Below the pieces are notes generated by a model that had not been told where the DNA came from, searched no databases, and worked only from the letters and a program-made list of their open reading frames with translations. The position numbers were made by a program, and so were the translations under genes. 64,000 nucleotides of DNA, taken from the IMG/VR virus record IMGVR_UViG_3300027963_000035, positions 124,001 through 188,000 of that record; one strand, given 5' to 3'. Positions 20,555 to 59,806 of this stretch are shown piece by piece (position 1 is the stretch's first letter; the number at the start of each line of letters is the position of its first letter).

Positions 20555-20566
20555 CCATTAAATCTA

Positions 20567-20637: not shown

Positions 20638-20696
20638 CAATCATTCAAAAAAACCGAAAACTTTTGCCTCTCGAACGGAAATTAAAAGGGAAGGTT

Positions 20697-24124: not shown

Positions 24125-24171
24125 GATGAAACTCCCAGAGTTATCGGCAAGAGTTTACCGTACCGAAAGCC

Positions 24172-24384
24172 TCAGATGACCCCCTCCAAGTAGGATTCAA
24201 ACTGGACAAGCAGTTCAATCTTATTATTCTTAGGCTTGATTCCCTTTTCCTGAAGGATTCTTTTCACAATCTGGCTGACGTTGAACCTTGAGTGCTTGAG
24301 TCCCTTAGTCTCCAACTTCAATGCACTCTTGAGACTGAGCAGACGATACTTTTCAACATTCAGGCCAGTGATAACGGTAGTCAT
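24172..24384 (-). CDS. hypothetical protein
   Basis: Start MTTVITG after GAGGA; motif at 24418. Confidence 0.65.
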   Translation of the reverse strand: MTTVITGLNVEKYRLLSLKSALKLETKGLKHSRFNVSQIVKRILQEKGIKPKNNKIELLVQFESYLEGVI

Positions 24385-24434
24385 TTTTAGTCCTCTTTGT
24401 TGATGGAACAAGAGTTTACCGTACCTGATTCATT

Positions 24435-24656
24435 TCAACCAAGATAACGATACTTAGCGTCCTCAACCTTTTCATCAATATTGTAGACGGTCAAACCGAT
24501 GATGTTATGGTCGTTCCACAAAGTTTCAAAAAGATGACTAATCTTTTTGCGGTCAGTATTCTTGATATAACCCTTTTTACCGTCCTTGAACATGATCTCC
24601 AGAATATAACCACTGACCCAAGACAAACCATCGAACCACTTGATGTTCTTGAACAT
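24435..24656 (-). CDS. hypothetical protein
   Basis: Start MFKNIK after AAGGA; motif at 24694. Confidence 0.6.
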   Translation of the reverse strand: MFKNIKWFDGLSWVSGYILEIMFKDGKKGYIKNTDRKKISHLFETLWNDHNIIGLTVYNIDEKVEDAKYRYLG

Positions 24657-24691
24657 TGTTTTTTCCTTTGGGCTAGGGTTAAGACAAGAGT

Positions 24692-24901
24692 TTACCGTAC
24701 TGGATTCCAAAGATTATCTTCCCTGAGTTCCTTACGGAGCAGGGTTGCTTCCTCCAGCAACTTCCTCTGTTCAATGAGGAAGTTCTTTACTGCGGAGTCA
24801 TACTCCCCACTATTTTGGGTATCCAGAATATTCTTCTTAGTCTCCCAAATAAGAGTGCTAAGAGCCCGGTCGATGATGTTTTTTTGCTCTGGGGTCATCA
24901 C
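24692..24901 (-). CDS. hypothetical protein
   Basis: AGGAG RBS, motif at 24922; ends VR-stop inside the next motif. Confidence 0.6.
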   Translation of the reverse strand: MMTPEQKNIIDRALSTLIWETKKNILDTQNSGEYDSAVKNFLIEQRKLLEEATLLRKELREDNLWNPVR

Positions 24902-25219
24902 TTTTCTCCTTTTGGTTTTTTACCGTACCAAAAACATAAAGTTTAACCCTAGATTTAACTAGGGTTGTTGCTTTTAACACTAGCCAGTTCACCGTATAGG
25001 TTAACTGCAAGATACAGTGCTTCTCTCTTGTTAGCAGCCCATACATACCCGACAACGCCGACTCGCCAGTAAACTTCCCATTCAGTAAGCATGGTATTGG
25101 CTCCGTGGTTAATGGTTCACACCCAATCTACGTACCAAAAACTAAAAAGAAAAATCCCCCGATCATAATGAAAACTCTACGCTTAGCGTGGAATCACCAA
25201 TATGATCGGGGGAGAGTCT

Positions 25220-25624
25220 TTATTCTGCCCCTAGTGCCACTTTCACGGCATTGACCATTTGACCATAGAAACTACCGGCAAAGTTGCCCCCACACATTTC
25301 TGCTAGTTCCCGCTGAAATGCGGTTGGGGTCATTCCGCCCTTACGATTACCCTCTCTGTAGACCGTAGCCTTAGCCTTTACTTTCACAAAGTCCAGTTTG
25401 TGATTCTGACGCTCTACGGTGCGATCTGGAGCCGTAATACTAAAAGTGCCTCTTCCGGCCCGATTAGTATAAACAACCCGCCAGACTTGATCCTCGCTCG
25501 CCTTGGAGTGTCGGATGGTTCCCTTTACCATCAAGCCACCAACACGGCGAAACTCTGTGCCGTTTTCTGTCTCAAAAGGATAGAACTTGATTGGCTTGGG
25601 TTCATCAACGATTTGCCACGGCAT
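25220..25624 (-). CDS. hypothetical protein
   Basis: 134 aa, AAGGA RBS, motif at 25661, long hairpin downstream (25155-25213). Confidence 0.7.
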   Translation of the reverse strand: MPWQIVDEPKPIKFYPFETENGTEFRRVGGLMVKGTIRHSKASEDQVWRVVYTNRAGRGTFSITAPDRTVERQNHKLDFVKVKAKATVYREGNRKGGMTPTAFQRELAEMCGGNFAGSFYGQMVNAVKVALGAE

Positions 25625-25691
25625 TGTCTGATTCCTTAGTGGTGTTGGTTACAACTATAACCCGTACTAGATACTATCCCCGTAGGGATCA

Positions 25692-25907
25692 TCAACCCGT
25701 GATGACACTCAGCACTTCATCGTTGAGCGGGTTGATTACCGGATCGAACTCGACCGGAACTTCAACTTCACGCTGATTCTGGATGATGTTGACAATCGCA
25801 TTGACCAGAACCCGCTCGTTGACAGTGTAGTGACCCCGATTGTGAATCTCCTTTGAGGCTTCCATGTCCTTGAGCAACTTCAGGCGACGAGTCTTAGTAA
25901 CTTTCAT
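25692..25907 (-). CDS. hypothetical protein
   Basis: AGGAG RBS, motif at about 25943. Confidence 0.65.
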   Translation of the reverse strand: MKVTKTRRLKLLKDMEASKEIHNRGHYTVNERVLVNAIVNIIQNQREVEVPVEFDPVINPLNDEVLSVITG

Positions 25908-25955
25908 CTCTAACTCCTGAGAAGTGGAGGGAACAACACTAACCCGTACCGGATT

Positions 25956-26234
25956 CTAGTCATGCCTCTTGATTCGATAGTTCATGCCGCCCTCGACCAG
26001 CAGATTCCATCCGTAGGAATCCAATGAATCAATCAACTCCTCAAATACAAGACGATCCGGCAGGAGTGATAACATGATCTTCGGTCCATTGACCTTGCCG
26101 ATGAGCCAGTGTACCGCCCGTTCACGGTCGAATGCCGCCACCCTTTCGGGGTCGAACCGATGGATGAAGGTGCATGGGAACGGCTCTTCTCCGAACCGCT
26201 GAACCAGATCATCAATAGTGGTTTCTAACGCCAT
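25956..26234 (-). CDS. hypothetical protein
   Basis: AAGGA RBS, motif at 26266. Confidence 0.65.
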   Translation of the reverse strand: MALETTIDDLVQRFGEEPFPCTFIHRFDPERVAAFDRERAVHWLIGKVNGPKIMLSLLPDRLVFEELIDSLDSYGWNLLVEGGMNYRIKRHD

Positions 26235-26278
26235 GATTTCCTTTCGTTTCGGGTAACAACTCCCGACCGTACCGGATT

Positions 26279-26479
26279 CTAGTTGATTTCTAGAATATCT
26301 ACCCTCAAACCATCCTTATGGTAACTCTCACCCCTAGAATATCGGGGGAGGGTTGAATGAGTTACTGACGGGTCAAACTTAATAATCCAATCGTCCGCAC
26401 AACCCACTGCATCATAGTAGTTGTCGAAACTGGTAACACTCTCAGGAACACTGTCACGAATGACCATTGCAAGCCACAT
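26279..26479 (-). CDS. hypothetical protein
   Basis: AGGAG RBS, motif at 26502. Confidence 0.65.
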   Translation of the reverse strand: MWLAMVIRDSVPESVTSFDNYYDAVGCADDWIIKFDPSVTHSTLPRYSRGESYHKDGLRVDILEIN

Positions 26480-26515
26480 TTGGATTCTCCTTTGAAGTTT
26501 TACCGTACCAAATCT

Positions 26516-26722
26516 TTATGATTTGAACTGTCGGTCTTTGCTCATAATCCTGTTAACGGCAGCCCAACTCCACTGAAAACTCTTTGGGCCGTTCAACTGA
26601 GCCACAGTAGGAAACTTCTCAAGGAAGCCCACGATTTTAGCGGGCTCCCCATCAAGCCAGCAAGCATTGTCGTTCTTCCACTGTTCAACAGCAAACTCAT
26701 GATCCTCGATTGTGCTTCTCAT
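26516..26722 (-). CDS. hypothetical protein
   Basis: AGGA RBS, motif at 26769. Confidence 0.65.
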   Translation of the reverse strand: MRSTIEDHEFAVEQWKNDNACWLDGEPAKIVGFLEKFPTVAQLNGPKSFQWSWAAVNRIMSKDRQFKS

Positions 26723-26780
26723 TTTTAATCCTAGTTATTAAAAGTAAAAGTAAGGCTCACAAGTCTTTACCGTACCAAAA

Positions 26781-26827
26781 TCGACCGCTAGGATTGAACC
26801 TAGTGAATCCCCAAACGGGACGGTCGA
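26781..26827 (-). ncRNA. truncated tRNA-like element (acceptor stem, one hairpin, T arm)
   Basis: TCGACCG TCCC GTTTG GGGA TTCA CTAGG TTCAAT CCTAG CGGTCGA. Confidence 0.45.
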
Positions 26828-26990
26828 AGATTGTTTAGCGTGGGTTGTTATTATCAATGATAATAGAAATAATACCGCTACACAATCCAAGGAAGCACAT
26901 CATTTGAAGACTCTTCAGGTATTCACAACCAGTCAGATTCCCGGCTTCGACCAGGAACCAGAAACCGTACCCATGGGAAACCCCGTGGGC

Positions 26991-27026
26991 CTCACCCCCC
27001 GGCCTATTGTTTGGCCGGGGGGTGAG
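26991..27026 (-). terminator. 14-bp GC hairpin after HTH paralog
   Basis: ctcaccccccggcc / ggccggggggtgag. Confidence 0.65.
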
Positions 27027-27037
27027 TGTGACTAACT

Positions 27038-27298
27038 TCAGAGCATCTCGACGCCAAGGCTGGCGAGAATCTCCGTCGCACGCTCCTTGGTATTGCTGGT
27101 GCGACCACCACCCTCAAACTTCGGGATATTCAGCCCGTGCTTCTTCCGCAACTGGCTCAGACGCACCGACACCGAACCCGGAACGATGCCCAACTTGCTT
27201 GCAACGTCCTCGACGCTGCCACCAGCCCGCTGCACTTCGATAACCGTGGTGAGAAACGTCTCAAGATCAACACCCTTCTGACCAACTTGGCGACCCAT
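27038..27298 (-). CDS. small sigma-region-4-like HTH protein (paralog 2)
   Basis: MGRQVGQKG..GGSVEDVASKLGIVPGSVSVRLSQLRKK; AGGAG RBS; motif at 27377. Confidence 0.8.
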   Translation of the reverse strand: MGRQVGQKGVDLETFLTTVIEVQRAGGSVEDVASKLGIVPGSVSVRLSQLRKKHGLNIPKFEGGGRTSNTKERATEILASLGVEML

Positions 27299-27396
27299 AG
27301 TAATCATCTCCTGCTTATAGTTACCAACCCTTTGGTTCCCGCTTGCCTCATTGGCTTGCTGTCGGAACAAACCCTAACCGTACCGAATCTTATCCT

Positions 27397-27660
27397 TTAC
27401 CGATTATGACAACGGAAACCGTCTCTCCGTGTCATATTTGCTTCAATCTCCCTAAAAAGATCCCTCATAGCCAGATAGTTCTTAAACTCTGGCTCCTTTT
27501 CAAACTGTGTAGCGGCTTCGATAAGGCTTGAAACCGGCTTCACAGTCTCCCTTGCGTAATAATCTTCAAGGAAACCAAGAGTGTATCGGTCAAGACCACT
27601 ACTGGTTTTTGTATCGTCTGGCATTTTTTCTCTCCAGAAACCGTAAAAACTGTTTTCCAT
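27397..27660 (-). CDS. hypothetical protein (predicted leaderless)
   Basis: ATG 8 nt after TACGGA. Confidence 0.65.
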   Translation of the reverse strand: MENSFYGFWREKMPDDTKTSSGLDRYTLGFLEDYYARETVKPVSSLIEAATQFEKEPEFKNYLAMRDLFREIEANMTRRDGFRCHNR

Positions 27661-27871
27661 ATCTCTGCTCCGTACTAAAAACTAATCTTCGGGGTGAGGG
27701 CCGGGAACACCGTTGAAAAACGGGTTTGGCATCCAAACATCATAATCAGTTAAAATCCATTGACGTTCTGGATGTTCGGCCCCAACATGAAGTGCGTATT
27801 CCCGCATTGCATCAATAGGTTTTGCAAGTTCATCTGGCATCAATCGTCTCCTTTTTTATTGGAACGATAGT

Positions 27872-28078
27872 CTACCGTACCGAAAAGTCACTCTCACACC
27901 AGCCCATAGCCTCCGCCATGTCCTTCTTTATTCCCGGGATCGTCCAAACATTGGCTTCCTGCCTTGATGCTTGCCAACCCTTGAAGGGAACATATCGGAG
28001 TTGATACACAATATCTCCCTCTTTTGCTTCGTAATACGGCTTTGTATTATACCGATTCTTTTTCTTTTGCCAAAGCAT
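27872..28078 (-). CDS. hypothetical protein
   Basis: GAGGAG RBS; ends SVR-stop inside the motif. Confidence 0.6.
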   Translation of the reverse strand: MLWQKKKNRYNTKPYYEAKEGDIVYQLRYVPFKGWQASRQEANVWTIPGIKKDMAEAMGWCESDFSVR

Positions 28079-28123
28079 TGTTATTCTCCTCTGGTTGATA
28101 ACTGTACCTGATCTTACCTGATC

Positions 28124-28444
28124 TTACCTCTTGTAGAGATAACTACCATAGGGATCACAAACTTCGACCAACCTTTGAATATCGTTCACAACATTAAATC
28201 TTGCTCCATTTTTGGCCGGAGCCTTCCAACTTGCTGCCTTATAAATATCCCCATTTTCGTCTATAAAGGCATGGACACTTTTGTTAGCACCCCACAGCGG
28301 TTCCCCGTTACTATCCAGCCAACGCTCTTGACGAACCACTCTAGTATACTTTCGCCCCGGTTCAAGAATGTATTTAGTCTCAGCCCCAGTGGTGTTAGAC
28401 TTCTCAGTCAAAGCAGCGAGCCAAAGTTCGACTTGTTCTTGCAT
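28124..28444 (-). CDS. conserved phage protein
   Basis: GRKY..V...SVHAFID..GD.YKAASWKAPAK pattern common in large phages. Confidence 0.75.
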   Translation of the reverse strand: MQEQVELWLAALTEKSNTTGAETKYILEPGRKYTRVVRQERWLDSNGEPLWGANKSVHAFIDENGDIYKAASWKAPAKNGARFNVVNDIQRLVEVCDPYGSYLYKR

Positions 28445-28476
28445 TGTTATTTCTCCTCTGTTGCCTATTCACCGTA

Positions 28477-28785
28477 CTAAATCAGATTCCGGCCCTTCAG
28501 CCATTCATAGACAACACCGCTGGCGTTGTTGATCTTCATATTATCATTCTGGCAGTCGTTAATAAGGTTGATTAACAATACCCTATTGATATTAACGCCC
28601 TTAACGGGAAGATGCCACCAATCCCCAATATCACAAAACTCCAGTCTAAGGTATTCTAATACCTTGTCCCGATAGTTTTTCCTTGAGGCAAGATCGTGTT
28701 TATTGTATCCCTTGTGGGCGTCGTGACCCTTCACGTTCTTAGTCCCCCACCAATCTTCATAGAATCCATCGTAGAAGTCGTTCAT
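28477..28785 (-). CDS. hypothetical protein
   Basis: AGGAG RBS; TAG stop overlaps the motif at 28471. Confidence 0.65.
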   Translation of the reverse strand: MNDFYDGFYEDWWGTKNVKGHDAHKGYNKHDLASRKNYRDKVLEYLRLEFCDIGDWWHLPVKGVNINRVLLINLINDCQNDNMKINNASGVVYEWLKGRNLI

Positions 28786-28812
28786 TGTGTTTCTCCTTGA
28801 TGATTGATCGTA

Positions 28813-29025
28813 CTAGAAAAGTTCTCTATAGCCGGGGAACTCGTCAATATATCCCACCTGCCATTCAGTACCATCCTCAGCAATCATGGTTTTAATCTTA
28901 GAGGTTGGCTTGTAAAGTGCATTGACCAAAGTATCAATCGCCCAAAAGAAACTCGCTACGATCACAACCATACCAACAAGACTAGTCAGATACATACCGA
29001 TGATGAAAATGTCTGTTGTTGTCAT
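28813..29025 (-). CDS. small membrane protein
   Basis: N-terminal TM helix; motif at 29062. Confidence 0.6.
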   Translation of the reverse strand: MTTTDIFIIGMYLTSLVGMVVIVASFFWAIDTLVNALYKPTSKIKTMIAEDGTEWQVGYIDEFPGYRELF

Positions 29026-29059
29026 CTTTATTACTCTTTAGTGATGTTAGGACAAATCT

Positions 29060-29242
29060 TTACCGTACCAAAATCTGACGGAGTTCATCAGAGAGAGTTT
29101 TTTCTCGCTCCAGAGTTTCAACAATACTACCCAGCCTCATGCTAATGAAGTTGAGAGTATCAGGCTCAACCATACCCTGACTATTCAGGGGAGCAGTATC
29201 CACAAAAATCCTGAGCATCTTGAGAGTATCAATGGTATCCAT
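29060..29242 (-). CDS. hypothetical protein
   Basis: AAGGA RBS; ends LVR-stop in the motif. Confidence 0.55.
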   Translation of the reverse strand: MDTIDTLKMLRIFVDTAPLNSQGMVEPDTLNFISMRLGSIVETLEREKTLSDELRQILVR

Positions 29243-29575
29243 TAGTTCAATCCTTTAGCGACAGAAATAAAGAGGAATATAGATAAAAAGATAACTAGTC
29301 CAGAAAATCAAGAAAGCCAAAATGCCTAGACCACTAACCATACCAAACGTGTCAACATCATCTGGATGTTCACCAAACAGATTGTAGCAAATCCAGTTTT
29401 TCATTGTGAAAACTTTCCTGCGAGAAATCCAAGACAAAATACAATATTCAGAATCGGTAGAATGAACACAAAAAAGATAAAACAAGCACGATACATTTTC
29501 TTTTCCTTAGAAGTATCCATACTGGTCTAACGTCCAGTGGCGTTTTTGACTTCCACCGCTTATAGGATACCTGTA

Positions 29576-29749
29576 CTAGAAACTTTCAAATGCGTCCCAG
29601 AATCCCACCTTATTGCCGTTAGAGTCTTTGAGAACCCCATCATCCCCTGCTTTAATGTTAGAGGGGATTTGAGTTAGAATCTCACCCAGTTCGTTGGGGT
29701 TATCATTAAAACTAGCGTTGTCCATGTTCACTTCAATAATGATTTTCAT
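29576..29749 (-). CDS. hypothetical protein (predicted leaderless)
   Basis: MKIIIEVNMDNASF..DSNGNKVG, 57 aa, ATG 8 nt after TACGGT at 29758; below ORF-track cutoff. Confidence 0.6.
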   Translation of the reverse strand: MKIIIEVNMDNASFNDNPNELGEILTQIPSNIKAGDDGVLKDSNGNKVGFWDAFESF

Positions 29750-29763
29750 ATTTATTCACCGTA

Positions 29764-29988
29764 CTAAAAAGGATAATCTTCGGGCCACTCTTGACTCTGA
29801 CTATATATTTCCATTTCATCATAGTGGGCATTGAGTTCTGGATCATTAGTAAGTTCAACATAATGACCCCGTTCACAAACGATGTTACGCTTCTCCAGAA
29901 TCTTATAGATGATTCTTTCGGCGTTAGTAAGATCGGCAACGCTAATGCCGATGATAGCCCGTGCGATTTGTTCCAGTTCAGTGTTCAT
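29764..29988 (-). CDS. hypothetical protein
   Basis: AGGAG RBS, motif at 30013. Confidence 0.65.
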   Translation of the reverse strand: MNTELEQIARAIIGISVADLTNAERIIYKILEKRNIVCERGHYVELTNDPELNAHYDEMEIYSQSQEWPEDYPF

Positions 29989-30228
29989 CTTTTGCTCCTT
30001 GGGTAAGGTGGAACCGTACTAGATGTTATTGAACTCTGTGCTAAGATACTTCATATCTTCACCGCACTTTTCGCATACCGGGGTTCCGGCATCTTCATAC
30101 CACCACGGAGTAACATGAGTAACACAATCACAATCTGCACAACGCCAAACGTGACGGAGTTTAGTATCGTCGATAACAGTCCAGTTTTCCATTTTATTCT
30201 CCTTGAGTAAGTTGGAACCGTACCAGAA

Positions 30229-30531
30229 TCAACGAATCGTGTTGTTGGGCGTCTGACAAATCATAATCTGCTGCTGAGATTGTGAGGACTGATTTACCAC
30301 AGCAATCTCCATAGAGCCTTGCTGATTGACCCTGCACCAATATGTTCCGGTAGAATCACTCCAATACCGGTAGTTATTATCATAGCCCCTATAGACATTG
30401 TATTGGGGTTCAACACGATGATACTTCCTTGCCTCCACAATCGTATGAACAACAGGGGCGGCTTCCTTACCACACTGGAGACAAGCAACAAGTAATCCAA
30501 CAACTAAACTGGCAATCTGAAGGTAAAACAT
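30229..30531 (-). CDS. hypothetical protein with signal/TM segment
   Basis: Hydrophobic N-terminus, motif at 30574. Confidence 0.65.
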   Translation of the reverse strand: MFYLQIASLVVGLLVACLQCGKEAAPVVHTIVEARKYHRVEPQYNVYRGYDNNYRYWSDSTGTYWCRVNQQGSMEIAVVNQSSQSQQQIMICQTPNNTIR

Positions 30532-30595
30532 TTTCTAATCCTTTGAAGAATGTTTGTTTCGGAACAACCCACAACCGTACCAAAATCAACTATCT

Positions 30596-30898
30596 TTAAC
30601 AAGCCAAATCTTCATTTTTATCTGCGAGGTAGTTTTTGTTTTCTTCACAATCTTCTACCAAGCGAGAATACAAAAATCTTTGTTCAGGGGTATTTTTGTT
30701 TTTGTATACTAAGCCCTGCCCCCGATTCCAGTTGGGTGCAAGGAATATGGCAGAGGCTAAGAGGTCTAACTCCTCATGCAAGAAGTCAATCGTAAAACCA
30801 TTGTTCCTCAGATCATTCGCAGCATTTTCAATGTTTTGATAAACCTTGAAGTTAGTGTATGGATGAACTGGGTCAAAAACAACAAATACAGTTTTCAT
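30596..30898 (-). CDS. hypothetical protein
   Basis: AAGGA RBS, motif at 30927. Confidence 0.65.
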   Translation of the reverse strand: MKTVFVVFDPVHPYTNFKVYQNIENAANDLRNNGFTIDFLHEELDLLASAIFLAPNWNRGQGLVYKNKNTPEQRFLYSRLVEDCEENKNYLADKNEDLAC

Positions 30899-30938
30899 GT
30901 TATCTTCCTTTATTGTCTTTCACACAACCGTACCAAAA

Positions 30939-31142
30939 TCAACTATCCTTTAGACATTCCCTGATCATTTGGATTAGATTAGAAGCGTCACCCAAAGCCG
31001 CAGATTCAAAATCATTTTCAAGATTTTCAGCGACATTATCAAGGATTGTCTCGATATTTCGTAGTGCAATAGCAGTATCCTTTGACGATACAGGCCAGTC
31101 AATACCAAGAGCCTCTGCTATTTGTTTCTTGGTTATTCTCAT
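30939..31142 (-). CDS. hypothetical protein
   Basis: AAGGA RBS. Confidence 0.6.
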   Translation of the reverse strand: MRITKKQIAEALGIDWPVSSKDTAIALRNIETILDNVAENLENDFESAALGDASNLIQMIRECLKDS

Positions 31143-31187
31143 TATTTTCCTTTTGTATTGATATACCGGCTGAGAATGGATCGACTT

Positions 31188-31266
31188 ATGGAACGATGGG
31201 ATTTGAACCCATAACTCCTCTTGCTTTTAAAGCAAGTGGAACTCTATCCAGTTGAGTTACGCTCCA
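31188..31266 (-). tRNA. atypical tRNA-like RNA with elongated anticodon arm (loop UU UAA AA)
   Basis: TGGAGCG/CGTTCCA acceptor, ACTC/GAGT D stem, ATGGG TTCAAAT CCCAT T arm; anticodon arm 23 nt instead of 17. Confidence 0.7.
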
Positions 31267-31516
31267 CGATAGTTTCACAAATAGTGTCCGGTATCACGCA
31301 CTATTCAACCTTATTTAGGTTTCTATCCGACCCCTGACGCATTTATATTGAATCTGTGCCGGGAATCCAACCCGGATAGAGAGCAGCATAAGCCTCACCA
31401 TAGCCTAGTTCGGCAACCCCATACACCCATTAGATGCAGACGCTGTTTGCTGGGCTATCTCTCTACTGTCGGCAGACACACAGTTTGTATCTCGTTGACT
31501 CCACACCGTACCAAAA

Positions 31517-31795
31517 TCAATCGTTCTCGTATATGCCCTTAGTATATTCTTTTGGAATGATTGGACACCAACCTTTAGCCTTTTCATTATCATAAGGCAT
31601 CCAGAATGGAGCATCACAAGCGTCTACTACTCCGAACTTATTATTCACAAAGATATGAGGACAAAGTTTAGTCCCCTTTATTTCACGTTCTTCATAATGG
31701 TATTTGCCAATACCGATCCCAATATTAGGGCCGAAGTAATAAACTTCCTGATCCTTTTCTGGAGGGAAGTTATGACTGCTTTTCCATGTGTTCAT
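31517..31795 (-). CDS. hypothetical protein (predicted leaderless)
   Basis: ATG 8 nt after TACGGT at 31804. Confidence 0.65.
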   Translation of the reverse strand: MNTWKSSHNFPPEKDQEVYYFGPNIGIGIGKYHYEEREIKGTKLCPHIFVNNKFGVVDACDAPFWMPYDNEKAKGWCPIIPKEYTKGIYEND

Positions 31796-31801
31796 GTTTT
31801 T

Positions 31802-32011
31802 CTACCGTACCGAATACAGACTGGCGATTGTTTCACCGTCAAAGTTTTTGTTTAATTCTTTTATATACTTCTCGGCTGATTCTTTATTCTGCCATTTAAC
31901 TACAAATGGCTTTTGGTGAATATCACCTTTATCGGTAACTGGCTTGTGATCCTTATAAACCACAAACCAGCGGCCTTCTTCTTTCACAGAATAGTTATTT
32001 GATCGTTTCAT
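31802..32011 (-). CDS. hypothetical protein
   Basis: Follows tRNA-Glu; ends SVR-stop in the motif. Confidence 0.55.
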   Translation of the reverse strand: MKRSNNYSVKEEGRWFVVYKDHKPVTDKGDIHQKPFVVKWQNKESAEKYIKELNKNFDGETIASLYSVR

Positions 32012-43566: not shown

Positions 43567-44388
43567 ATGAAAAAACCATCTATTGCTCCTGATAAATCAT
43601 TACCAACTCCTTGGGAAGGATCAGTTATTAAAAAGCCCTGGGAATATAAGGTCACAGCGGTCATACCTTGTATCAATGCTATGGATAGTTTACCATTAGT
43701 GATTGAAACTCTCAGACTACAAACTGAAAGACCTTATATTGTGATCGTTGATACTGGGAGCGAGGATACTAGTAGTATTGAAGATTTAAGGGATGAGGAT
43801 GTTGAGATTCATTTTATTCGTTCCAATAGTTGGCGGCATCCAAGTGAACCAGTAACAGCAGCAATGGATTTAAGTTTATCATTCGTTCACACTAGGTTCT
43901 TGTTTTGCACCCATTCAGACTGTTTTCTTAAAAGAAAAGAATTATTAGCTGAAATGGTTGAACTGTGCGAATTGCATAAAGCAGTTGGCTATCAACTTAG
44001 TCCTAGGCCACATCCAGATTGGGAATGGATGCTAGGACATACTTGCACTATGTTTGATGTAATGACACTAGACAAAATTGATGCAACTTGGGGTCTCCGA
44101 AGATTATGTAATAATCGTGGAGTAGAACTCAAACCAGCAGTATGTGGTCCAAATTGGCCTGATACAGAACTATTAATTAACTATCAACTTAAACAAAACG
44201 GTATAAATTCTCTACTAATAGGTTCAGAGCAGAACTATGAGAGAACAAATGATAATAACATTGATCATTGTCGCTCACTTCCTAGTTCTATGATTTATTT
44301 TGAACAATACGCTCAAAATGCTAAATTATGGATGAATGATGCTATAGAACAAGCAAAGAAAAGAATTGAAGAGTGGTCAGAGAAATGA
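43567..44388 (+). CDS. glycosyltransferase family 2
   Basis: TAVIP, IVIVDTGS, THSD. Confidence 0.8.
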   Translation: MKKPSIAPDKSLPTPWEGSVIKKPWEYKVTAVIPCINAMDSLPLVIETLRLQTERPYIVIVDTGSEDTSSIEDLRDEDVEIHFIRSNSWRHPSEPVTAAMDLSLSFVHTRFLFCTHSDCFLKRKELLAEMVELCELHKAVGYQLSPRPHPDWEWMLGHTCTMFDVMTLDKIDATWGLRRLCNNRGVELKPAVCGPNWPDTELLINYQLKQNGINSLLIGSEQNYERTNDNNIDHCRSLPSSMIYFEQYAQNAKLWMNDAIEQAKKRIEEWSEK

Positions 44389-45509
44389 GTAGATTTTCAA
44401 AAGACGAAGAAGTATATTTTTACAATAAAGAAACCAACGAAATACTAGCGGGCAAAATATTCGACATTAAAGATAAAAATGAATATCAAATAATTTGTTA
44501 TATTGATATGAAATCTAGAGTGACGCCCTATACGCCAATAGTATCAGAATCAGAAATCAGTCACAATAAAGATGAACTTGAGTATTTAGTAAAAAACACT
44601 CAAATATACAAACGCTATAAACTATTACTTAGAAACATATCAAAAACAGATAAAGGATTGGAAATTGGACCTTTTTATCATCCAATTGCACCAAAAAAAG
44701 ACGGATGGCAAACAACAATAGTCGATATATGTTCTAAAGAAGATTTAATCAAAAAACTATCGCCAGAAATCATGTCGCATGGATTGTCTAAAAATATAGA
44801 AGATATAGACATTTTGTGGGATTGGAAAAATGAGTCTTTAGAGGAAGCGGTAAAAAATAAAGTTGGTAACAATTTAGATTATATAATAAGTAGTCATTCA
44901 ATAGAACATGTGGTTGATATTCTTGATTTTTTAAAATCTTGCTCTAACCTGCTTAAAGAGAGTGGAGTATTTAACTTGGCAGTCCCAGATTTAAGATATA
45001 ACTTTGATTTTTTTAGAAATCCTTCCTCTCTTGGTCAAGTATTATCGGTATATAACAATAAAACCAAAAGACATTCTTCTGAAGTCTACTTAGATTCCAT
45101 AAATCATCAATCTTGGGCTGACAAACAAAGTGCTTGGAGGCCACATTCTTCTCAAGAAGTTGTTCTTTATCCTCAAAAACTTGAAGTTTCATGGAAGTTA
45201 TACCAAGATAATTTGATTTCTGAAAATCATACTGATTGTCACAATTGGGCTTTCACACCCAGCAGTTTCAAGCTTTTATTTTTTGAGTTGTTGGTTTTAG
45301 GTTTTATTGATCTAATGGTAAATAAAATAGTTCAAGATGACTCCGAAAATGGTTCAGAGTTTATTGTTCAACTCATAAAAATAGACAAAACAAGCATAGA
45401 AATGAAATCTGAAGAAATACATGAACATCGTTTAAAATTATTGTCTAATATCGTAATTGAACTTGCACAAAGAGTAGAAATAGGAAAGTTAAAATACCAT
45501 TATCTTTAA
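44385..45509 (+). CDS. class I SAM-dependent methyltransferase
   Basis: GLEIGP, DYIISSHSIEH, LK..G....AVPD. Confidence 0.8.
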   Translation: MSRFSKDEEVYFYNKETNEILAGKIFDIKDKNEYQIICYIDMKSRVTPYTPIVSESEISHNKDELEYLVKNTQIYKRYKLLLRNISKTDKGLEIGPFYHPIAPKKDGWQTTIVDICSKEDLIKKLSPEIMSHGLSKNIEDIDILWDWKNESLEEAVKNKVGNNLDYIISSHSIEHVVDILDFLKSCSNLLKESGVFNLAVPDLRYNFDFFRNPSSLGQVLSVYNNKTKRHSSEVYLDSINHQSWADKQSAWRPHSSQEVVLYPQKLEVSWKLYQDNLISENHTDCHNWAFTPSSFKLLFFELLVLGFIDLMVNKIVQDDSENGSEFIVQLIKIDKTSIEMKSEEIHEHRLKLLSNIVIELAQRVEIGKLKYHYL

Positions 45510-46827: not shown

Positions 46828-47499
46828 TTATGGCATTAAAGTATCTTTTGTATGATGATCAAAAGATACATTTTTCATATCTCTAAACTTCTTTTTAACT
46901 TCAGCCAGAGATATTGGATATGGGCAATTCTCTACACCAACATCAATAATTTTGGCTTTATAGAGAATCTTGCCAATTTCGCTTTTGTATAGATTTGCGT
47001 GACAATGACTGTGGATCATAAATGAACCTTTGCTTTGGCGGTTCCAACTTGCCAAAGGATAATGGCTCATTACAATTTCTTGTCCACCTATGGTTGCTTC
47101 AAGATAATTAGGAACAAAGATCACCTTTTTATCTTCTTCTGGAAGATAAACATTTTCTTCAATGCTTTCAAAGATCTGCTTATATCCGCCCTGATGATTT
47201 CCAGGCATAACATAGAGTTTCTTAAAACTTATGTCTTTTAGAAACTTAATGAATTTTTCTTCGGCATTATGTCCGAAGATACTATCGCCAAGAAGAAATC
47301 CGATAGTATTATGGTTTGCCTTATTGTTCCAGTTGTTGACTAGGCCAAGATTATATTCTTCAATGCTATTATAGCCTCTGTGCTTCCAAATTGGAATTGT
47401 CCAATGTTCTGATAGATGGTCAAGATGAACACATCCCCAAAAAAGAACATTATTTTCTTTTTCGTTTTCTTTTATTGCTTTGTAGAAATAATCTTTCAT
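46828..47499 (-). CDS. calcineurin-like metallophosphoesterase
   Basis: (G)CVHLDH, LLGD, PGNH, MSHYP, HSHCH, DVGV. Confidence 0.85.
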   Translation of the reverse strand: MKDYFYKAIKENEKENNVLFWGCVHLDHLSEHWTIPIWKHRGYNSIEEYNLGLVNNWNNKANHNTIGFLLGDSIFGHNAEEKFIKFLKDISFKKLYVMPGNHQGGYKQIFESIEENVYLPEEDKKVIFVPNYLEATIGGQEIVMSHYPLASWNRQSKGSFMIHSHCHANLYKSEIGKILYKAKIIDVGVENCPYPISLAEVKKKFRDMKNVSFDHHTKDTLMP

Positions 47500-47667
47500 G
47501 ACAGTGATGAATAATCCTAGTTTAGATCTATTCCTTAATAGTTTCCTCTAGTAGACCAATAGCCGTTTCCAAAAATATCGGCCAATCCCATAAATCTACT
47601 TCGTAATCTATAGTATTATTCCAACTAGAGATAAAGTCCTTAATTCTATTCTTGAGTTCATTAGTCA

Positions 47668-47928
47668 TTATTTTTCTCCCTTTTCGGCAGTTAGTGTGAA
47701 ACAAGGACAATCAGGATGATGAATAATATCATGCCCATCTCTTATAAAAAGATGGTTGTCGTGCTTCACAGTAACAAAGTTATACATCCGACCATCTGGC
47801 GTAGACTTCTCACCATTCTCTATGCGTTTATTGTTGATAGATTGAATTGCCGGGACTAATAGTCCAATAAGAGTTAAAACAATAAACAAACAAACCAAAG
47901 CCTCTACAAGTGTAAATCCTTTTTTCAT
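47668..47928 (-). CDS. prepilin-type N-terminal cleavage/methylation domain protein
   Basis: MKKGFTLVEALVCLFIVLTLIGLLVPAIQ. Confidence 0.8.
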   Translation of the reverse strand: MKKGFTLVEALVCLFIVLTLIGLLVPAIQSINNKRIENGEKSTPDGRMYNFVTVKHDNHLFIRDGHDIIHHPDCPCFTLTAEKGEK

Positions 47929-47954
47929 TTTAATATAAGAGTAATTATCTCCCA

Positions 47955-48191
47955 TTAGTTATTCTCCAAATAGTTATCATGTTTAATAGCCTTTAAAGGA
48001 TAAGGAACAAATACTATTTCTGTTAGAAGTTTTCCCTCTATAGTTCGAGGTGGTTTACCAGACCCATCTAATACATATCTTTCTATTTGACCAGTTTCCG
48101 TATCCGCCCTAACAACATAGTCTAATCTGTTACCATTTGCATCAAATAGTTCATAATTATAATGGTCAAAGATATTAACGTCTAGTATCAT
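47955..48191 (-). CDS. hypothetical protein
   Basis: GGAGA RBS, part of a coupled small-gene run. Confidence 0.6.
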   Translation of the reverse strand: MILDVNIFDHYNYELFDANGNRLDYVVRADTETGQIERYVLDGSGKPPRTIEGKLLTEIVFVPYPLKAIKHDNYLENN

Positions 48192-48410: not shown

Positions 48411-49690
48411 CCATAAGTTTTATCAATATAATGTTTTGATTCATTTTTGACAATCATTATTTATTCTCCAATAAATTCACTATTAATCCAATGATTGTAC
48501 CTACCACAATACAAGCGTTGTTTTACGGTTACCATAGTTAACCATCTTGTTTCACGAATATCTTCTTCTATGATACTAACTGGAAACCATGCAAAAAACG
48601 TATGTATCCTAGTATCACCATCACGATAATTGGGGCTGATCCATCTCATCATTTATTCTCCATACCTAAGTTTCCACTCTGATAAATCAACATCAATACC
48701 AGCGGCCTCTTTAATTTTATTTACTATGTCTAGCCCACTATTTACAATCACATTCATTCTATCTCGACCTATTTGGGGAGATAACCCTAGTTCTAACATG
48801 GCAATATCATTTACAATATGCCGAATAATAGATTCCCACTGGTCTTTAGTAAGAGATAATGTTGCTGTAATCATATTTTGTTCGTTAGTCATTATTTTTC
48901 TCCTCAGTATCATACCACAAAATTACTTTGGTTCCATAGTCTGTACTAATCATTATTTTTCTAGGATTATATTCAACTCCTAGTTCTTCACAATAATCTT
49001 CTGCTTCTCTCGTCAAGTCCTTGAGAGAAACGGGTGCGGACAATTCTATAAGATTATCTTCGTTCATTTCTTTTCTCCAATATAATAATAACTTTAATCT
49101 ACGATACAACTTTCAATAGTCATATCTTCATAACCACCTTTATAGTAAGAAGTATCTCCATATCGCTCTTTTTTAGGTTTGGCTAATTTGGCATTTTCAA
49201 CAAAGTTTTTGGCTTTATTTTCGTCAGAGAATATTTTTACAATTTCTTTGTCTGGATGGGGTTCAAATGGCCCCCCAATAGTATCTTGATAAACATTTTG
49301 TTTTGTTCCAACAACAACATGAACATTCATTAGTTTTTTCTCCAAATTTTGCAAAATAAAAACAGCAACACTCAAAAGATAACTACATTGACCATGACTC
49401 ATTGGTCTAATAATAGGAAGTTCATTAGCCATTTCATAAGTGGTCAAAAAAGTTTGTATAGTTTCTTTAAGTTCGTTAGTCATTATTATTCTCCAATGGT
49501 CTTATAAAGAAAATCGGCCAACCTCTTGATTCCCTCATTGTCTACGCTAAATGACACGTTAGATTCTTTCTTGTCATTGTATAAGGAAACATGGTGAAGA
49601 TCATCATTAGAAAAAATTTCCATATAAATTCCATAAGTTTTATCAATATAATGTTTTGATTCATTTTTGACAATCATTAGTTATTCTCCA
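48411..49690. repeat. 60-bp direct duplication (48411-48470 and 49631-49690, one mismatch)
   Basis: ccataagttttatcaatataatgttttgattcatttttgacaatcatta(t/g)ttattctcca. Confidence 0.9.
49094..49483 (-). CDS. hypothetical protein
   Basis: 129 aa, GGAGA RBS. Confidence 0.6.
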   Translation of the reverse strand: MTNELKETIQTFLTTYEMANELPIIRPMSHGQCSYLLSVAVFILQNLEKKLMNVHVVVGTKQNVYQDTIGGPFEPHPDKEIVKIFSDENKAKNFVENAKLAKPKKERYGDTSYYKGGYEDMTIESCIVD

Positions 49691-53358: not shown

Positions 53359-54282
53359 TTACTCCTTTAAATGCTGTTTGAATAGAGAGGTGAATCTTGA
53401 ATTTTGCAAAAATTGTGGTGCTAACGCATGAATTTCATTCTTATCATCTTTGTCTATGAATTTATTTACGATATCTTCTGTTGTTTTTTCTAAGTCAAAA
53501 TCTATAATTTTATCAAAAGTGTTTGCGAATTCTTGATGTGCAAAACATTTTACTTTTGTGTTATTATCTGAGTGACAAGACATAGATGATACATGCCAAC
53601 CAATTGGTGAGTAAATAATGCTAATGTCTTGGATAGGGGCCCTGTATGAATTATACACCATGTGATTTTGATCTTGATCATCGAATCTAAAATCTGCCGG
53701 GGTGATATGACTTAAGTAAAAATAATCATCATGCTTATTTATATTCCTGTAGTCGTGTATATTGATTTTTTGTAAATTTTCAAAAGAAGTTACAAAGCCT
53801 TTGTGCCATGAATTCGATAACGGATCATCTAAAATAGTGAATCTAAAATCATAGTATGATAAATAATTTATGCAATTTAGATTGTCGATTTTGTTTAAAG
53901 AATCTATATTTTGAATCTCATCAATATCCTGGGTGCAAATTAAATCTCCTTCTTTGGCAATCTGCAGTATTGCATTTTGTAAATAGTTTCTATGGTAAAA
54001 TTCAACTATCCAACGATTTTCTTTTGCCTTGAAATTATTATGTCCTAAAAAATTACCCTTGTATGGTTTTGGTAAATTTTCGAGTTTAACATATAAGATC
54101 CTATCTTCATATTTTTTAAATATGTCTTTATATTTTTCATAGAAAAAGGGCTTACTTAAACCGCTAAAAGTAGAATTTGCTTCGGCTAAAATTATAAAAT
54201 CAAAGTATTTTAAGTCATACTCCAGTCTAGCCTCCAGGAGCCAGACCTCATTATTCATTATTAAGCAATTATATTTTTTCAT
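53359..54282 (-). CDS. glycosyltransferase family 17-like
   Basis: NE..LLE.RL, AEAN.TFSG..KP, E..HRN, DIDEI, GWH.S. Confidence 0.8.
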   Translation of the reverse strand: MKKYNCLIMNNEVWLLEARLEYDLKYFDFIILAEANSTFSGLSKPFFYEKYKDIFKKYEDRILYVKLENLPKPYKGNFLGHNNFKAKENRWIVEFYHRNYLQNAILQIAKEGDLICTQDIDEIQNIDSLNKIDNLNCINYLSYYDFRFTILDDPLSNSWHKGFVTSFENLQKINIHDYRNINKHDDYFYLSHITPADFRFDDQDQNHMVYNSYRAPIQDISIIYSPIGWHVSSMSCHSDNNTKVKCFAHQEFANTFDKIIDFDLEKTTEDIVNKFIDKDDKNEIHALAPQFLQNSRFTSLFKQHLKE

Positions 54283-58893: not shown

Positions 58894-59763
58894 TTATTGT
58901 TTAAGTTTTTCTATGTTTTCTAGCAACTCTTTGTCATCTGCAATAGTTGCTTCTTTTATAAAATCACCTAGATTTAATACTTTTTGACTTAATGAGAACA
59001 CATTTGCTTTTCTTTTATTTTGATTCTCGGTATCTTTGATATCTATAAAAACTTCTGGGTCTTCCCCTAAAAATTTCATAATATCTTTATAAAAAACAAC
59101 ATGATCATCGCCAATTAAATTTTCATAGGCCACACGATGATATTCTATATTGTTTAATAAACAAAAACAAACCGCATCAGCTTCTTCTTTTAATAAATTT
59201 ATTTTATATTTAGTGTATTTATCATACGATACATTTACGCTAACTATGTTATTTTTATCGCTGTTGATCTTATTACCCCACGAACAAGAACTAACTCTTG
59301 TGACTTGACTTGTCAACCATGAAATATATTTTAATAAAATATTATCACGAGTCAAATGTATTATTTTTATATTATTTTTTTTTATATATTTTAAAAAATC
59401 ATCAAGTTTGATAGAATCCTCTGGCGGTAGCCAATAATTCTTAAGATGATATTCAAAAAATGCTTTAAATCCAAAGTATTTTGACGGAACAACATCTTCC
59501 CATAGTTTTAAGTATTCTTCAAAATTTCTATTTCTATTGATTACGAATTTAGATGGATCGTTTCCAAGTATATTGGCCAATTTTTTTTGAATCTCTATAT
59601 TATTAAATAGTTCTGCTTTTTTTTGTAGTGATGTGTATTTTATCTCTTTATCCGGCTGTAACAACTCATATTCGCATATTATATTTTTTTGATTTGTTAA
59701 AAACTCACATAACATTTGCGATCCACTTCGATGTGTCGTGATAATTATAAATTTTTTTGCCAT
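58894..59763 (-). CDS. sulfotransferase (Stf0-like)
   Basis: HRSGS PAPS-binding loop, GFK, IIHLTR.N.L..Y.S, V.YE.L. Confidence 0.8.
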   Translation of the reverse strand: MAKKFIIITTHRSGSQMLCEFLTNQKNIICEYELLQPDKEIKYTSLQKKAELFNNIEIQKKLANILGNDPSKFVINRNRNFEEYLKLWEDVVPSKYFGFKAFFEYHLKNYWLPPEDSIKLDDFLKYIKKNNIKIIHLTRDNILLKYISWLTSQVTRVSSCSWGNKINSDKNNIVSVNVSYDKYTKYKINLLKEEADAVCFCLLNNIEYHRVAYENLIGDDHVVFYKDIMKFLGEDPEVFIDIKDTENQNKRKANVFSLSQKVLNLGDFIKEATIADDKELLENIEKLKQ

Positions 59764-59806
59764 AATTTTAAATCTATTAATAAAAATTAGCAAATATATA
59801 TATCAT

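What the first reader, a model, noticed from the sequence alone, without database searches (positions are those of the whole stretch)
47668..47928. Phage-encoded mini prepilin with a planctomycete DUF1559-style leader
Seen: KKG|FTLVEALVCLFIVLTLIGLLVPAIQ followed by a short unrelated tail ending HHPDCPC. Established: G|FTLVELLVVIAIIGxLxALLLPAVQ is the hallmark N-terminus of the expanded planctomycete DUF1559 family. Inference: a host marker and a possible pilus/secretion-jamming or superinfection-exclusion factor.
Basis: partly seen in the sequence, partly recalled or inferred. Interest (0 to 1): 0.6.

Follow-up and report, generated by a model that had tools for sequence, protein, structure and literature searches.

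The report
Phage mini-prepilin carrying a new His/Cys domain
A freshwater jumbo phage encodes a small, real, conserved protein whose front end copies the export signal of planctomycete DUF1559 proteins, and whose supposedly unrelated tail is the defining domain of a large, undescribed family of membrane-tethered phage proteins.

Summary
Window 47668-47955 (-) encodes an 86/95-aa protein with a prepilin-type leader (Pfam N_methyl 25.7 bits, cut-off 21.2). P-A-I-Q sits at +22..+25, the register typical of planctomycete DUF1559 leaders. The contig is a tailed jumbo phage of at least 251 kb from lake metagenomes.

A Planctomycetota host is supported indirectly:
- The leader matches 115 and 40 DUF1559-type frames in two Planctomycetia genomes, against 1-3 in three others.
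- A second prepilin-leader gene lies in the same phage.
- A related phage carries a true DUF1559 gene 1.4 kb from its copy.

The "unrelated tail" reading is wrong. The tail (T-V-K-H-D-N-H ... H-H-P-D-C-P-C) is the most conserved part. A profile of it finds 336 clusters of 60-130-aa proteins. Their N-termini are interchangeable: prepilin-type (about a quarter), lipoprotein signal, or a plain membrane helix. No Pfam, PHROG, NCBIfam, PDB or literature match covers the domain, and no convincing copy turned up in about 1,200 cellular genomes.

Best reading: a periplasm-facing, membrane-tethered, probably metal-binding mini-domain acting at the host envelope. The prepilin leader is a host-adapted delivery and anchoring device. 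Superinfection exclusion is plausible but untested.

The parts
47668..47955 (-). Gene for the mini-prepilin: 95 aa from the ATG at 47953-47955, stop codon at 47668-47670. The 86-aa form starts at the internal ATG at 47926-47928.
   Evidence: ORF list and sequence. 25 homologue clusters at 67-98% identity, one distant member at 46%.
47964..47967 (-). GGAG Shine-Dalgarno-like site, 8 nt upstream of the first ATG. That ATG overlaps the stop of the upstream ORF (TAATG).
   Evidence: Read directly from the sequence.
47917..47955 (-). Leader peptide MGDNYSYIKMKKG (or MKKG). The predicted prepilin-peptidase cut lies after Gly13.
   Evidence: Pfam N_methyl match. Gly at -1 is at least 90% conserved in the close family. 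Cleavage itself is inferred, not shown.
47842..47916 (-). Hydrophobic N-terminal helix F14-Q38 with Glu at +5 and P-A-I-Q at +22..+25 (DUF1559-style register).
   Evidence: The AlphaFold2 model has a helix at residues 7-37 of the 86-aa form, with block-mean pLDDT 76-93 over residues 1-30.
47683..47787 (-). Conserved C-terminal mini-domain, residues 57-91: a three-stranded beta-meander plus a short helix.
   Evidence: Profile search finds 336 clusters. Alignment A4. AlphaFold2 mean pLDDT 76.4, block means 84-90 over domain residues 11-40.
47752..47763 (-). H-D-N-H motif (H65 D66 N67 H68).
   Evidence: Invariant in the close family. H, D and H are at least 90% conserved in the broad family.
47701..47721 (-). 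H-H-P-D-C-P-C motif (residues 79-85).
   Evidence: Invariant in the close family. In the broad family H, P and the first C are invariant, and the second H and second C are at least 90% conserved.
47955..48191 (-). Upstream 78-aa ORF, translationally coupled to the mini-prepilin gene. No family match, and not conserved next to the gene in relatives.
47528..47668 (-). Downstream small ORF (46 aa from the ATG at 47666-47668), also joined by a TAATG overlap.
   Evidence: No family match.
46828..47499 (-). Neighbouring metallophosphoesterase gene on the same strand.
   Evidence: phrog_547, 107 bits. Weak Pfam Metallophos match.

Best explanation
The gene encodes a small accessory protein of a freshwater jumbo phage that most likely infects a member of the Planctomycetota.

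Its N-terminus is a host-type class III (prepilin) signal. A short basic leader ends in Gly, followed by Phe+1, Glu+5, a hydrophobic helix of about 21 residues, and the DUF1559-style P-A-I-Q.

Inferred steps: the protein inserts into the cytoplasmic membrane. The host prepilin peptidase probably cuts it, since the contig encodes none. The helix stays in the membrane or in a pilin-like assembly.

The helix displays on the periplasmic side a domain of about 35 residues: three beta strands plus a short helix, with an invariant cluster of four His, two Cys and two Asp. This cluster most likely holds a metal ion (Zn or Cu) or is redox-active.

That domain is the functional unit. Other phages display the same domain from a lipoprotein anchor or a plain N-in/C-out membrane helix. 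The prepilin leader is therefore a host-adapted delivery and anchoring device, not evidence that the protein is a structural pilin.

The gene sits among small co-directional accessory genes, not in a lysis or virion module. I take its most likely job to be acting on an envelope target of the infected cell, for example excluding superinfecting phages or blocking an uptake or entry structure.

Shown: sequence features, family distribution, anchor swapping, phage origin. Inferred: topology, cleavage, metal binding, envelope function.
For: - Prepilin leader.
- DUF1559-style register and match counts in Planctomycetia genomes.
- Phage identity.
- Conserved family with an invariant His/Cys tail.
- Broad family: 336 clusters of mostly 60-130 aa, with the domain at the C-terminus.
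- Swapped anchors among the 142 small proteins of the 148 newly listed best matches (six longer proteins set aside). A crude regex gives 21 prepilin-type, 31 lipobox, 79 membrane helix and 11 none. Pfam N_methyl hits 23 of 143. A looser count gives about 35 prepilin-like members, with Gly or Ala at -1 and Glu at +5 in 31. Viral examples of each anchor type.
- Domain model: AlphaFold2 mean pLDDT 76.4, three strands and a short helix.
- No prepilin peptidase in the phage contig.
- Neighbours are small accessory genes or replication-type genes, with no lysis cassette.
- Host link: a second leader-bearing gene whose nearest Atlas cluster is mostly Planctomycetota. A true DUF1559 gene in related phage contig L005 is 42-46% identical over its full length to 82 paralogues of one Planctomycetia genome.
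- Literature: DUF1559 is reported as restricted to PVC/Planctomycetes (PMC4807772, PMC10632474). Lake phages predicted to infect Planctomycetes, including fragments over 300 kb, are reported in PMC9040852.
Against: - No experiment, RNA data or structure exists. No RNA run holds the locus.
- Metal binding is inferred only from conserved His/Cys. Two Cys in a periplasmic C-P-C could instead form a disulfide.
- Glu+5 and Gly/Ala-1 are kept across divergent prepilin-type members. This suggests real class III processing and perhaps fibre assembly, not just anchoring.
- The host link is indirect. The phage has 36% GC, against 47-57% in the matching Planctomycetota loci.
- This contig has no DUF1559 gene. 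No CRISPR or prophage evidence was obtained.
- No conserved neighbour points to a function.
Confidence: 0.5

Rival explanations
1. It is a true minor pilin or pseudopilin. The host peptidase cuts it and it enters host type IV pilus, type II secretion or DUF1559-based fibres. There it caps or poisons them, blocking piliation, uptake or adsorption of pilus-dependent phages.
For: - The class III signal is complete and scores over the Pfam cut-off.
- Glu+5, which established knowledge links to fibre assembly rather than to cleavage, is kept in 31 of about 35 divergent prepilin-type members. Gly or Ala stands at -1.
- The leader is close to those of the expanded host family.
- Very short pilins exist (my own knowledge: Geobacter PilA-N, ComGE).
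Against: - The same C-terminal domain occurs behind lipoprotein signals and ordinary membrane helices in other phages. Those cannot enter a pilus, so the shared function cannot depend on fibre insertion.
- A few close relatives have Arg or Glu at -1, which should prevent cleavage.
- No pilin-type globular head is present: the model shows a three-stranded meander.
- Competence-pilin NCBIfam models match only the N-terminal 40 residues and fall below their cut-offs.
Confidence: 0.2
2. It is a lysis-related membrane protein, such as a holin, antiholin or spanin-like component.
For: It is small and membrane-anchored with a periplasmic tail. Two of 143 family members give weak holin Pfam matches, E 0.002-0.005.
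Against: - No endolysin or other lysis gene sits next to it in any of about 21 independent viral loci.
- The weak holin matches are to membrane segments only.
- Both lipoprotein and helix anchors carry the same domain, which fits neither spanin component.
Confidence: 0.08
3. The leader resemblance to DUF1559 is convergent or inherited from an older host. The phage infects a low-GC host outside the Planctomycetota, and the protein says nothing about the present host.
For: - The phage has 36% GC, while the matching Planctomycetota loci have 47-57%.
- No DUF1559 gene lies in this contig.
- The best NCBIfam matches by name are Firmicute competence pilins.
- The domain was not found in 401 Planctomycetota genomes.
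Against: - P-[AS]-[VI]-Q in register occurs in 18 of 27 Planctomycetota leaders against 0 of 164 elsewhere.
- Match counts are 115 and 40 in Planctomycetia genomes against 1-3 in others.
- The second leader gene's nearest cluster is mostly Planctomycetota.
- The related phage has a full-length DUF1559 gene.
- The competence-pilin matches are below their cut-offs and cover only the N-terminus.
Confidence: 0.15

Closest known systems
Planctomycete DUF1559 proteins (Pfam PF07596 SBP_bac_10, with a PF07963 leader)
   Same: The leader is the same: basic residues, G|FTLVE, a hydrophobic helix, and P-A-[VI]-Q at +22..+25. Identity over residues 1-32 is 52-63%.
   Different: It lacks the DUF1559 body of about 270 residues and its C-terminal motif. 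It has 86-95 aa instead of 300-400. Its own His/Cys domain has no relation to DUF1559.
Small phage proteins with pilin-like N-termini (phrog_3433 'pilin', phrog_11263, phrog_13280, phrog_27437)
   Same: Short phage-encoded proteins with a prepilin-like N-terminus. Several family members match these PHROGs over residues 1-44.
   Different: The matches cover only the leader and helix. None covers the H-D-x-H ... H-H-P-D-C-P-C domain, and the window protein itself matches no PHROG. These PHROGs have no known function.
Small envelope-located superinfection-exclusion proteins of phages (lipoproteins Llp of T5, Cor, Ltp of TP-J34; periplasmic Sp of T4)
   Same: By analogy only: small size, extracytoplasmic and membrane-tethered, encoded among accessory genes, with lipoprotein-anchored versions in the family. 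Reviewed in PMC11436027 and PMC3952083 (listed).
   Different: No sequence or fold similarity was found. One of 143 members gave a weak Cor PHROG match, E 1.2e-4; which part of the protein matched was not examined. No exclusion phenotype is known.
Competence minor pilins ComGE/ComGF/ComGC (NCBIfam NF041013, NF041002, NF040999)
   Same: Best-scoring named NCBIfam models. Similar length to ComGE.
   Different: All scores are below the cut-offs (33.8 against 49, 29.3 against 80, 24.5 against 75). The matches stop at about residue 40-50, and the host phylum differs.

Membership tests
Prepilin-type (class III signal peptide) proteins, Pfam PF07963 / TIGR02532 | Match to the N-terminal cleavage/methylation motif model above its curated cut-off | tested here: met
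   PF07963 scores 25.7 bits against a cut-off of 21.2, and 27.1 bits in the six-frame search. TIGR02532 scores 15.7-16.0 against 16.3, marginally under.
Prepilin-type (class III signal peptide) proteins, Pfam PF07963 / TIGR02532 | Short basic leader ending in Gly, Phe at +1, Glu at +5, then about 20 hydrophobic residues | tested here: met
   KMKKG|FTLVEALVCLFIVLTLIGLLVP, read from the sequence. Gly-1 and Glu+5 are at least 90% conserved in the close family.
Prepilin-type (class III signal peptide) proteins, Pfam PF07963 / TIGR02532 | Cleavage and N-methylation by a prepilin peptidase | not testable with these tools
   No peptidase A24 gene lies in the phage contig. Host enzyme use is inferred.
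Type IV pilins / pseudopilins (structural fibre subunits) | Globular alpha-beta pilin head packed on the C-terminal half of the long helix | tested here: inconclusive
   The full-length model has mean pLDDT 61. The domain model shows a three-stranded meander plus a short helix. There is no significant PDB match: best Foldseek E 1.1, best VIA Z 2.6.
Type IV pilins / pseudopilins (structural fibre subunits) | Incorporation into a fibre by a pilus or secretion machine | not testable with these tools
   Indirect evidence against this being required: the same domain is carried on lipoprotein and plain-helix anchors.
DUF1559 (Pfam PF07596 SBP_bac_10) | Match to the PF07596 body of about 268 positions | tested here: not met
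   No PF07596 match in the protein or anywhere in the 251-kb contig. The model itself works: L005:6651-7556 scores 141 bits.
DUF1559 (Pfam PF07596 SBP_bac_10) | Leader with L-L-x-P-A-[VI]-Q in register | tested here: met
   P-A-I-Q at +22..+25. The motif occurs in 18 of 27 Planctomycetota leaders against 0 of 164 others.
Competence pilins ComGE/ComGF/ComGC | NCBIfam equivalog score above the cut-off over the full length | tested here: not met
   33.8 against 49, 29.3 against 80, 24.5 against 75. Only the N-terminal 35-42 residues match.
New family defined here: small membrane-tethered phage proteins with a C-terminal H-D-x-H ... H-H-P-D-C-P-C domain | C-terminal domain matching the A3/A4 profile, in a protein of 60-130 aa with an N-terminal membrane anchor | tested here: met
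   The own gene scores 59.6 bits, E 6e-17, against A4. 336 clusters match at E<=1e-3. Caveat: the window protein is the first row of both A3 and A4, so this score is partly circular.
New family defined here: small membrane-tethered phage proteins with a C-terminal H-D-x-H ... H-H-P-D-C-P-C domain | Restricted to viruses | tested here: inconclusive
   Found on IMG/VR contigs. No match in 401 Planctomycetota genomes. Two other phylum samples of 401 genomes each gave only weak partial matches of 26 bits or less, judged spurious on inspection. These are samples, and many family members come from unclassified metagenome contigs.

The most novel reading that the evidence does not exclude
The H-D-x-H ... 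H-H-P-D-C-P-C module is a phage-specific periplasmic metal or redox effector. Phages deliver it by whichever export and anchoring route suits the host: prepilin, lipoprotein or signal-anchor.

In phages of Planctomycetota it has been grafted onto the DUF1559 leader. It would then be processed like, and mix with, the hundred-fold expanded DUF1559 pseudopilin-like proteins, poisoning or re-tuning the envelope structure they build. This would give the first functional handle on DUF1559 biology and on phage entry or exclusion in planctomycetes.
Probability: 0.15. Interest if true: 0.8.

Novelty: new variant of a known kind. Interest (0 to 1): 0.55.

Why it matters
1. It gives a simple sequence marker for linking uncultured lake jumbo phages to Planctomycetota, a phylum with very few known phages: a DUF1559-style leader with P-A-[VI]-Q in register.

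2. It uncovers a large unannotated family of tiny phage envelope proteins, at least 336 clusters at 50% identity. They share an invariant His/Cys motif and carry three interchangeable anchors. This is a natural anchor-swap experiment, and it says the domain works on the outer face of the cytoplasmic membrane.

3. DUF1559 proteins are the largest paralogue family of planctomycetes and have no known function. Phages copying their leader, and in a relative a whole DUF1559 gene, suggests this system matters during infection.

Tried and rejected
- **Cultured phages.** tblastn of the protein and of three family members against 50,697 deposited phage genomes gave no match or one marginal match, E 6e-3. 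No cultured-phage anchor exists.
- **PHROGs.** There was no match for the window protein. Family members match PHROGs only through the leader.
- **PDB by sequence.** The profile search found nothing significant. The best hit, E 0.16, is a TRIM71 NHL blade hairpin, taken as chance.
- **PDB by fold.** Foldseek and VIA-align gave no meaningful match. The full-length model was too poor to search.
- **Conserved neighbours.** None was found across about 21 independent viral loci. A metallophosphoesterase lies nearby in three locus groups, which I did not consider informative.
- **Own contig.** It has no DUF1559, no prepilin peptidase and no ribosomal protein S21.
- **Cellular genomes.** The weak hits to the domain profile were inspected and rejected as partial motifs or non-coding frames. 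One is an unrelated Y-H-x-P-D-C metal-binding-type motif.
- **Literature.** No paper contains the motif HHPDCPC, and none combines DUF1559 with phage.
- **Failed call.** One search was a malformed request (a locus given as centre) and was corrected.

Full report
**1. What is there**

On the minus strand, window 47668-47955 holds an ORF of 95 aa, or 86 aa from the internal MKKG at 47928. The first ATG overlaps the stop of the upstream 78-aa ORF (TAATG) and has GGAG 8 nt upstream. The gene's own stop overlaps the ATG of a small downstream ORF in the same way. The three genes therefore form a translationally coupled chain on the minus strand.

The N-terminus reads: basic leader, G|FTLVEALVCLFIVLTLIGLLVPAIQ. 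Pfam N_methyl matches at 25.7 bits against a cut-off of 21.2. TIGR02532 falls just short at 15.7-16.0 against 16.3. The best-named NCBIfam models are competence pilins, but they match only the first 40 or so residues and all score below their cut-offs.

**2. The genome**

The window is bases 124001-188000 of a 251,265-bp IMG/VR virus record. The record is linear, CheckV estimates it about 50% complete, and its GC content is 35.7%. It encodes:
- a portal protein (phrog_213, 257 bits);
- a large terminase (phrog_2, 146 bits);
- baseplate wedge proteins, a tape-measure-like protein and a helicase.

It is a tailed jumbo phage. Its DNA is held in freshwater and lake metagenomes; the runs listed come from 16 studies. 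No RNA run holds it.

**3. The gene is real and conserved**

A word-based search found 25 clusters of 86-125 aa. 24 of them are 67-98% identical to the query and one distant member is 46% identical. They lie on contigs of up to 323 and 383 kb.

In their alignment the most conserved part is not the leader but the tail. T-V-K-H-D-N-H-L-F-I and I-H-H-P-D-C-P-C are invariant. The flanking small genes are mostly not conserved between these relatives. The gene is therefore kept in a variable accessory region.

**4. The tail defines a large family with swapped anchors**

A profile of the C-terminal 51 residues (A3) was run against 1.84 billion cluster representatives. It found 336 clusters at E<=1e-3. 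Almost all are 60-130 aa with the match at the C-terminus.

The broad consensus is T-V-x-H-D-G-H-L-F-x ... H-H-P-D-C-P-C. H, P and the first C are invariant. T, H, D, H, the second H and the second C are at least 90% conserved.

The N-termini differ in kind. Among the 142 small proteins of the 148 newly listed best matches (six longer proteins set aside), a crude classification gave:

| Anchor type | Count |
|---|---|
| Prepilin-type | 21 |
| Lipobox (lipoprotein signal) | 31 |
| Plain hydrophobic helix | 79 |
| None or truncated | 11 |

. Pfam N_methyl hits 23 of 143 members. A looser count gives about 35 prepilin-like members, with Gly (23) or Ala (12) at -1 and Glu at +5 in 31.

A scan of IMG/VR found 35 loci, including clear examples of each anchor type. 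Examples are prepilin-type in L085, L086 and L095, lipoprotein in L102, L107 and L118, and helix in L103 and L111. Their GC content ranges from 32% to 63%.

All three anchors put the C-terminal domain outside the cytoplasm:
- lipoproteins by definition;
- helices with basic N-termini by the positive-inside rule (an inference);
- prepilins by established pilin topology.

**5. The domain is undescribed**

- No Pfam model covers it.
- PHROG matches of family members cover only residues 1-44.
- A profile search of PDB sequences gives nothing better than E 0.16.
- AlphaFold2 on a 141-sequence alignment gives mean pLDDT 76.4, with block means of 84-90 over domain residues 11-40. The model has three beta strands and a short helix over the C-P-C.
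- Foldseek (best E 1.1) and VIA-align (best Z 2.6) find no meaningful match.
- No paper in the library contains the motif.

The invariant four His, two Cys and two Asp in about 25 residues suggest a metal site or a redox-active C-P-C. This is inference only.

**6. Is it viral only?**

The genome-collection scan with the family alignment used two peptide patterns, MKKGFT[LF]V and TVKHDNHL. Every relative it returned matched through the leader only.

The domain profile A4 matches the phage's own gene at 59.6 bits, E 6e-17. This is a partial positive control, because that protein is the first row of A4. The same profile matches nothing in 401 Planctomycetota genomes.

Two further phylum-level samples of 401 genomes each gave only 3 and 7 weak partial hits of 26 bits or less. 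On inspection these were fragments or non-coding frames. "Not found in those searched" is the correct wording.

**7. Leader style and host**

In the genome-collection scan the best leader matches (63-69% identity over residues 1-29) are almost all Planctomycetota MAGs: Planctomycetia, Planctomycetaceae, Pirellula and Thermoguttaceae.

The candidate loci were chosen by the pattern MKKGFT[LF]V, which does not include positions +22..+25. Counting all prepilin leaders found in those loci gives an unbiased comparison:

| Source of leaders | Leaders with P-[AS]-[VI]-Q at +22..+25 |
|---|---|
| Planctomycetota loci | 18 of 27 |
| Other phyla | 0 of 128 |
| Other PVC phyla | 0 of 36 |

. The phage protein has P-A-I-Q in exactly that register.

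Searched against five whole genomes, the protein hits 115 and 40 places in two Planctomycetia genomes. These are mostly frames of 300-400 aa, which I take to be DUF1559 paralogues. It hits 3, 1 and 1 places in a low-GC Planctomycetota MAG, a Verrucomicrobiota MAG and an Erysipelotrichaceae MAG. These five genomes were picked from the hit list, so the contrast is illustrative, not a survey.

Three further lines support the host link:
- **A second leader-bearing gene in the same phage** (G000 202203-203054, outside the window). It encodes 283 aa with the leader RG|TTLVELLVSITIIAVLSGLVLSAVQATRKSA and a weak DUF4886 match. Its leader hits 127, 51, 0, 0 and 0 places in the same five genomes. Its nearest Atlas cluster (score 0.95) is mostly Planctomycetota.
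- **A true DUF1559 gene in a related phage.** The 79.7-kb contig L005 carries, 1.4 kb downstream of its mini-prepilin, a gene scoring PF07596 141 bits plus N_methyl. It is 42-46% identical over its full length to 82 paralogues of one Planctomycetia genome.
- **Literature.** DUF1559 is reported as exclusive to the PVC superphylum or to Planctomycetes, with 68 paralogues in Planctopirus limnophila (PMC4807772, PMC10632474). Lake phages predicted to infect Planctomycetes, including fragments over 300 kb, have been reported (PMC9040852).

Caveats:
- The phage has 36% GC, against 47-57% in the matching loci.
- This contig has no DUF1559 gene of its own.
- No CRISPR or prophage link was obtained.

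**8. Mechanism**

The anchor swapping is the strongest clue. The shared function must be carried out by the His/Cys domain on the periplasmic face of a membrane, and it cannot depend on entry into a pilus.

The prepilin-type members all look planctomycete-like (L-L-x-P-A-x-x-x-A-R). I read the leader as a host-adapted export and anchoring device. However, Glu+5 and Gly/Ala-1 are retained in divergent members. True class III processing, and possibly co-assembly with host pseudopilins, therefore remains open.

The phage contig has no prepilin peptidase, so any cleavage must use the host enzyme.

The genomic setting is a run of small co-directional ORFs next to a phosphoesterase. In high-GC relatives the neighbours are MazG-like, DNA methyltransferase, helicase and integrase genes. 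This fits an accessory or early gene rather than a lysis or virion gene.

By analogy with small envelope-anchored phage proteins (Llp, Cor, Ltp, Sp), superinfection exclusion or blocking of an envelope structure is the most likely role. Nothing here tests it.

**9. Verdict**

| Claim | Verdict |
|---|---|
| Observation | Confirmed |
| Leader interpretation | Supported |
| Host-marker idea | Supported indirectly |
| "Unrelated tail" | Wrong |
| Pilus jamming | Weakened by the anchor swapping |

The finding is best described as a new variant of small phage envelope proteins. It has an undescribed conserved domain, here fused to a DUF1559-type prepilin leader.

No alternative genetic code was needed.

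Noticed in passing
window 20290-20638 (-): Rfam group I intron at 20338-20530 (68.6 bits), 35 nt downstream of tRNA-Thr. Removing it in silico makes ARAGORN call a second tRNA starting near 20554. A phage tRNA gene therefore seems to be interrupted by a group I intron in or near its anticodon loop. The exact junction and anticodon (His, Ser, Leu or Val depending on the junction) are unresolved.
   Followed up: partly
G000:C1:202203-203054 (-) = L001:730-1581 (outside the window): A second prepilin-leader gene in the same phage: 283 aa, leader RG|TTLVELLV...SAVQATRKSA, with a weak DUF4886 (SGNH-like) C-terminal match. Its leader hits 127 and 51 DUF1559-type frames in two Planctomycetia genomes. 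Its nearest Atlas cluster is mostly Planctomycetota.
   Followed up: partly
L005:6651-7556 (+), related 79.7-kb phage contig: A full DUF1559 gene (PF07596 141 bits, with N_methyl) in a phage, 1.4 kb from its mini-prepilin. A CarboxypepD_reg-domain protein lies upstream at L005:3475-4008. The DUF1559 gene is 42-46% identical to 82 paralogues of one Planctomycetia MAG.
   Followed up: partly
window 3723-6947 (-) and 12423-15917 (-): Two very large proteins (1074 and 1164 aa) with DUF5122 beta-propeller repeats plus FN3 or F5/8 type C domains. They are possibly host-recognition or adhesion proteins. Glycosyltransferase GT61 (11224-12435) lies between them.
   Followed up: no
window 24000-32000: This region has raised GC (0.41-0.46 against 0.31-0.41 across the rest of the window), only small ORFs mostly on the minus strand, and tRNA-Leu and tRNA-Glu at its end. 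The cause is unknown.
   Followed up: no
window 44373-45509 (+), 53359-54282 (-), 58894-59793 (-): Methyltransferase, GT17-like glycosyltransferase and a weak sulfotransferase-like gene. Together they form a set of glycan- or surface-modifying genes in the accessory region.
   Followed up: no
window 47528-47668, 48653-48913, 49094-49483 (-): Several small neighbouring ORFs share an N-terminal M-T-N-E-(L/Q)-K start, suggesting a local paralogous family of tiny proteins around the mini-prepilin.
   Followed up: no
P0058, P0162 (metagenome proteins of the family): Unusual architectures in the family. P0058 has two tandem copies of the His/Cys domain. P0162 has an N-terminal extension of about 135 residues ahead of the prepilin-like helix, and one family member matched DUF551. 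These may be gene-calling run-ons or real fusions.
   Followed up: no
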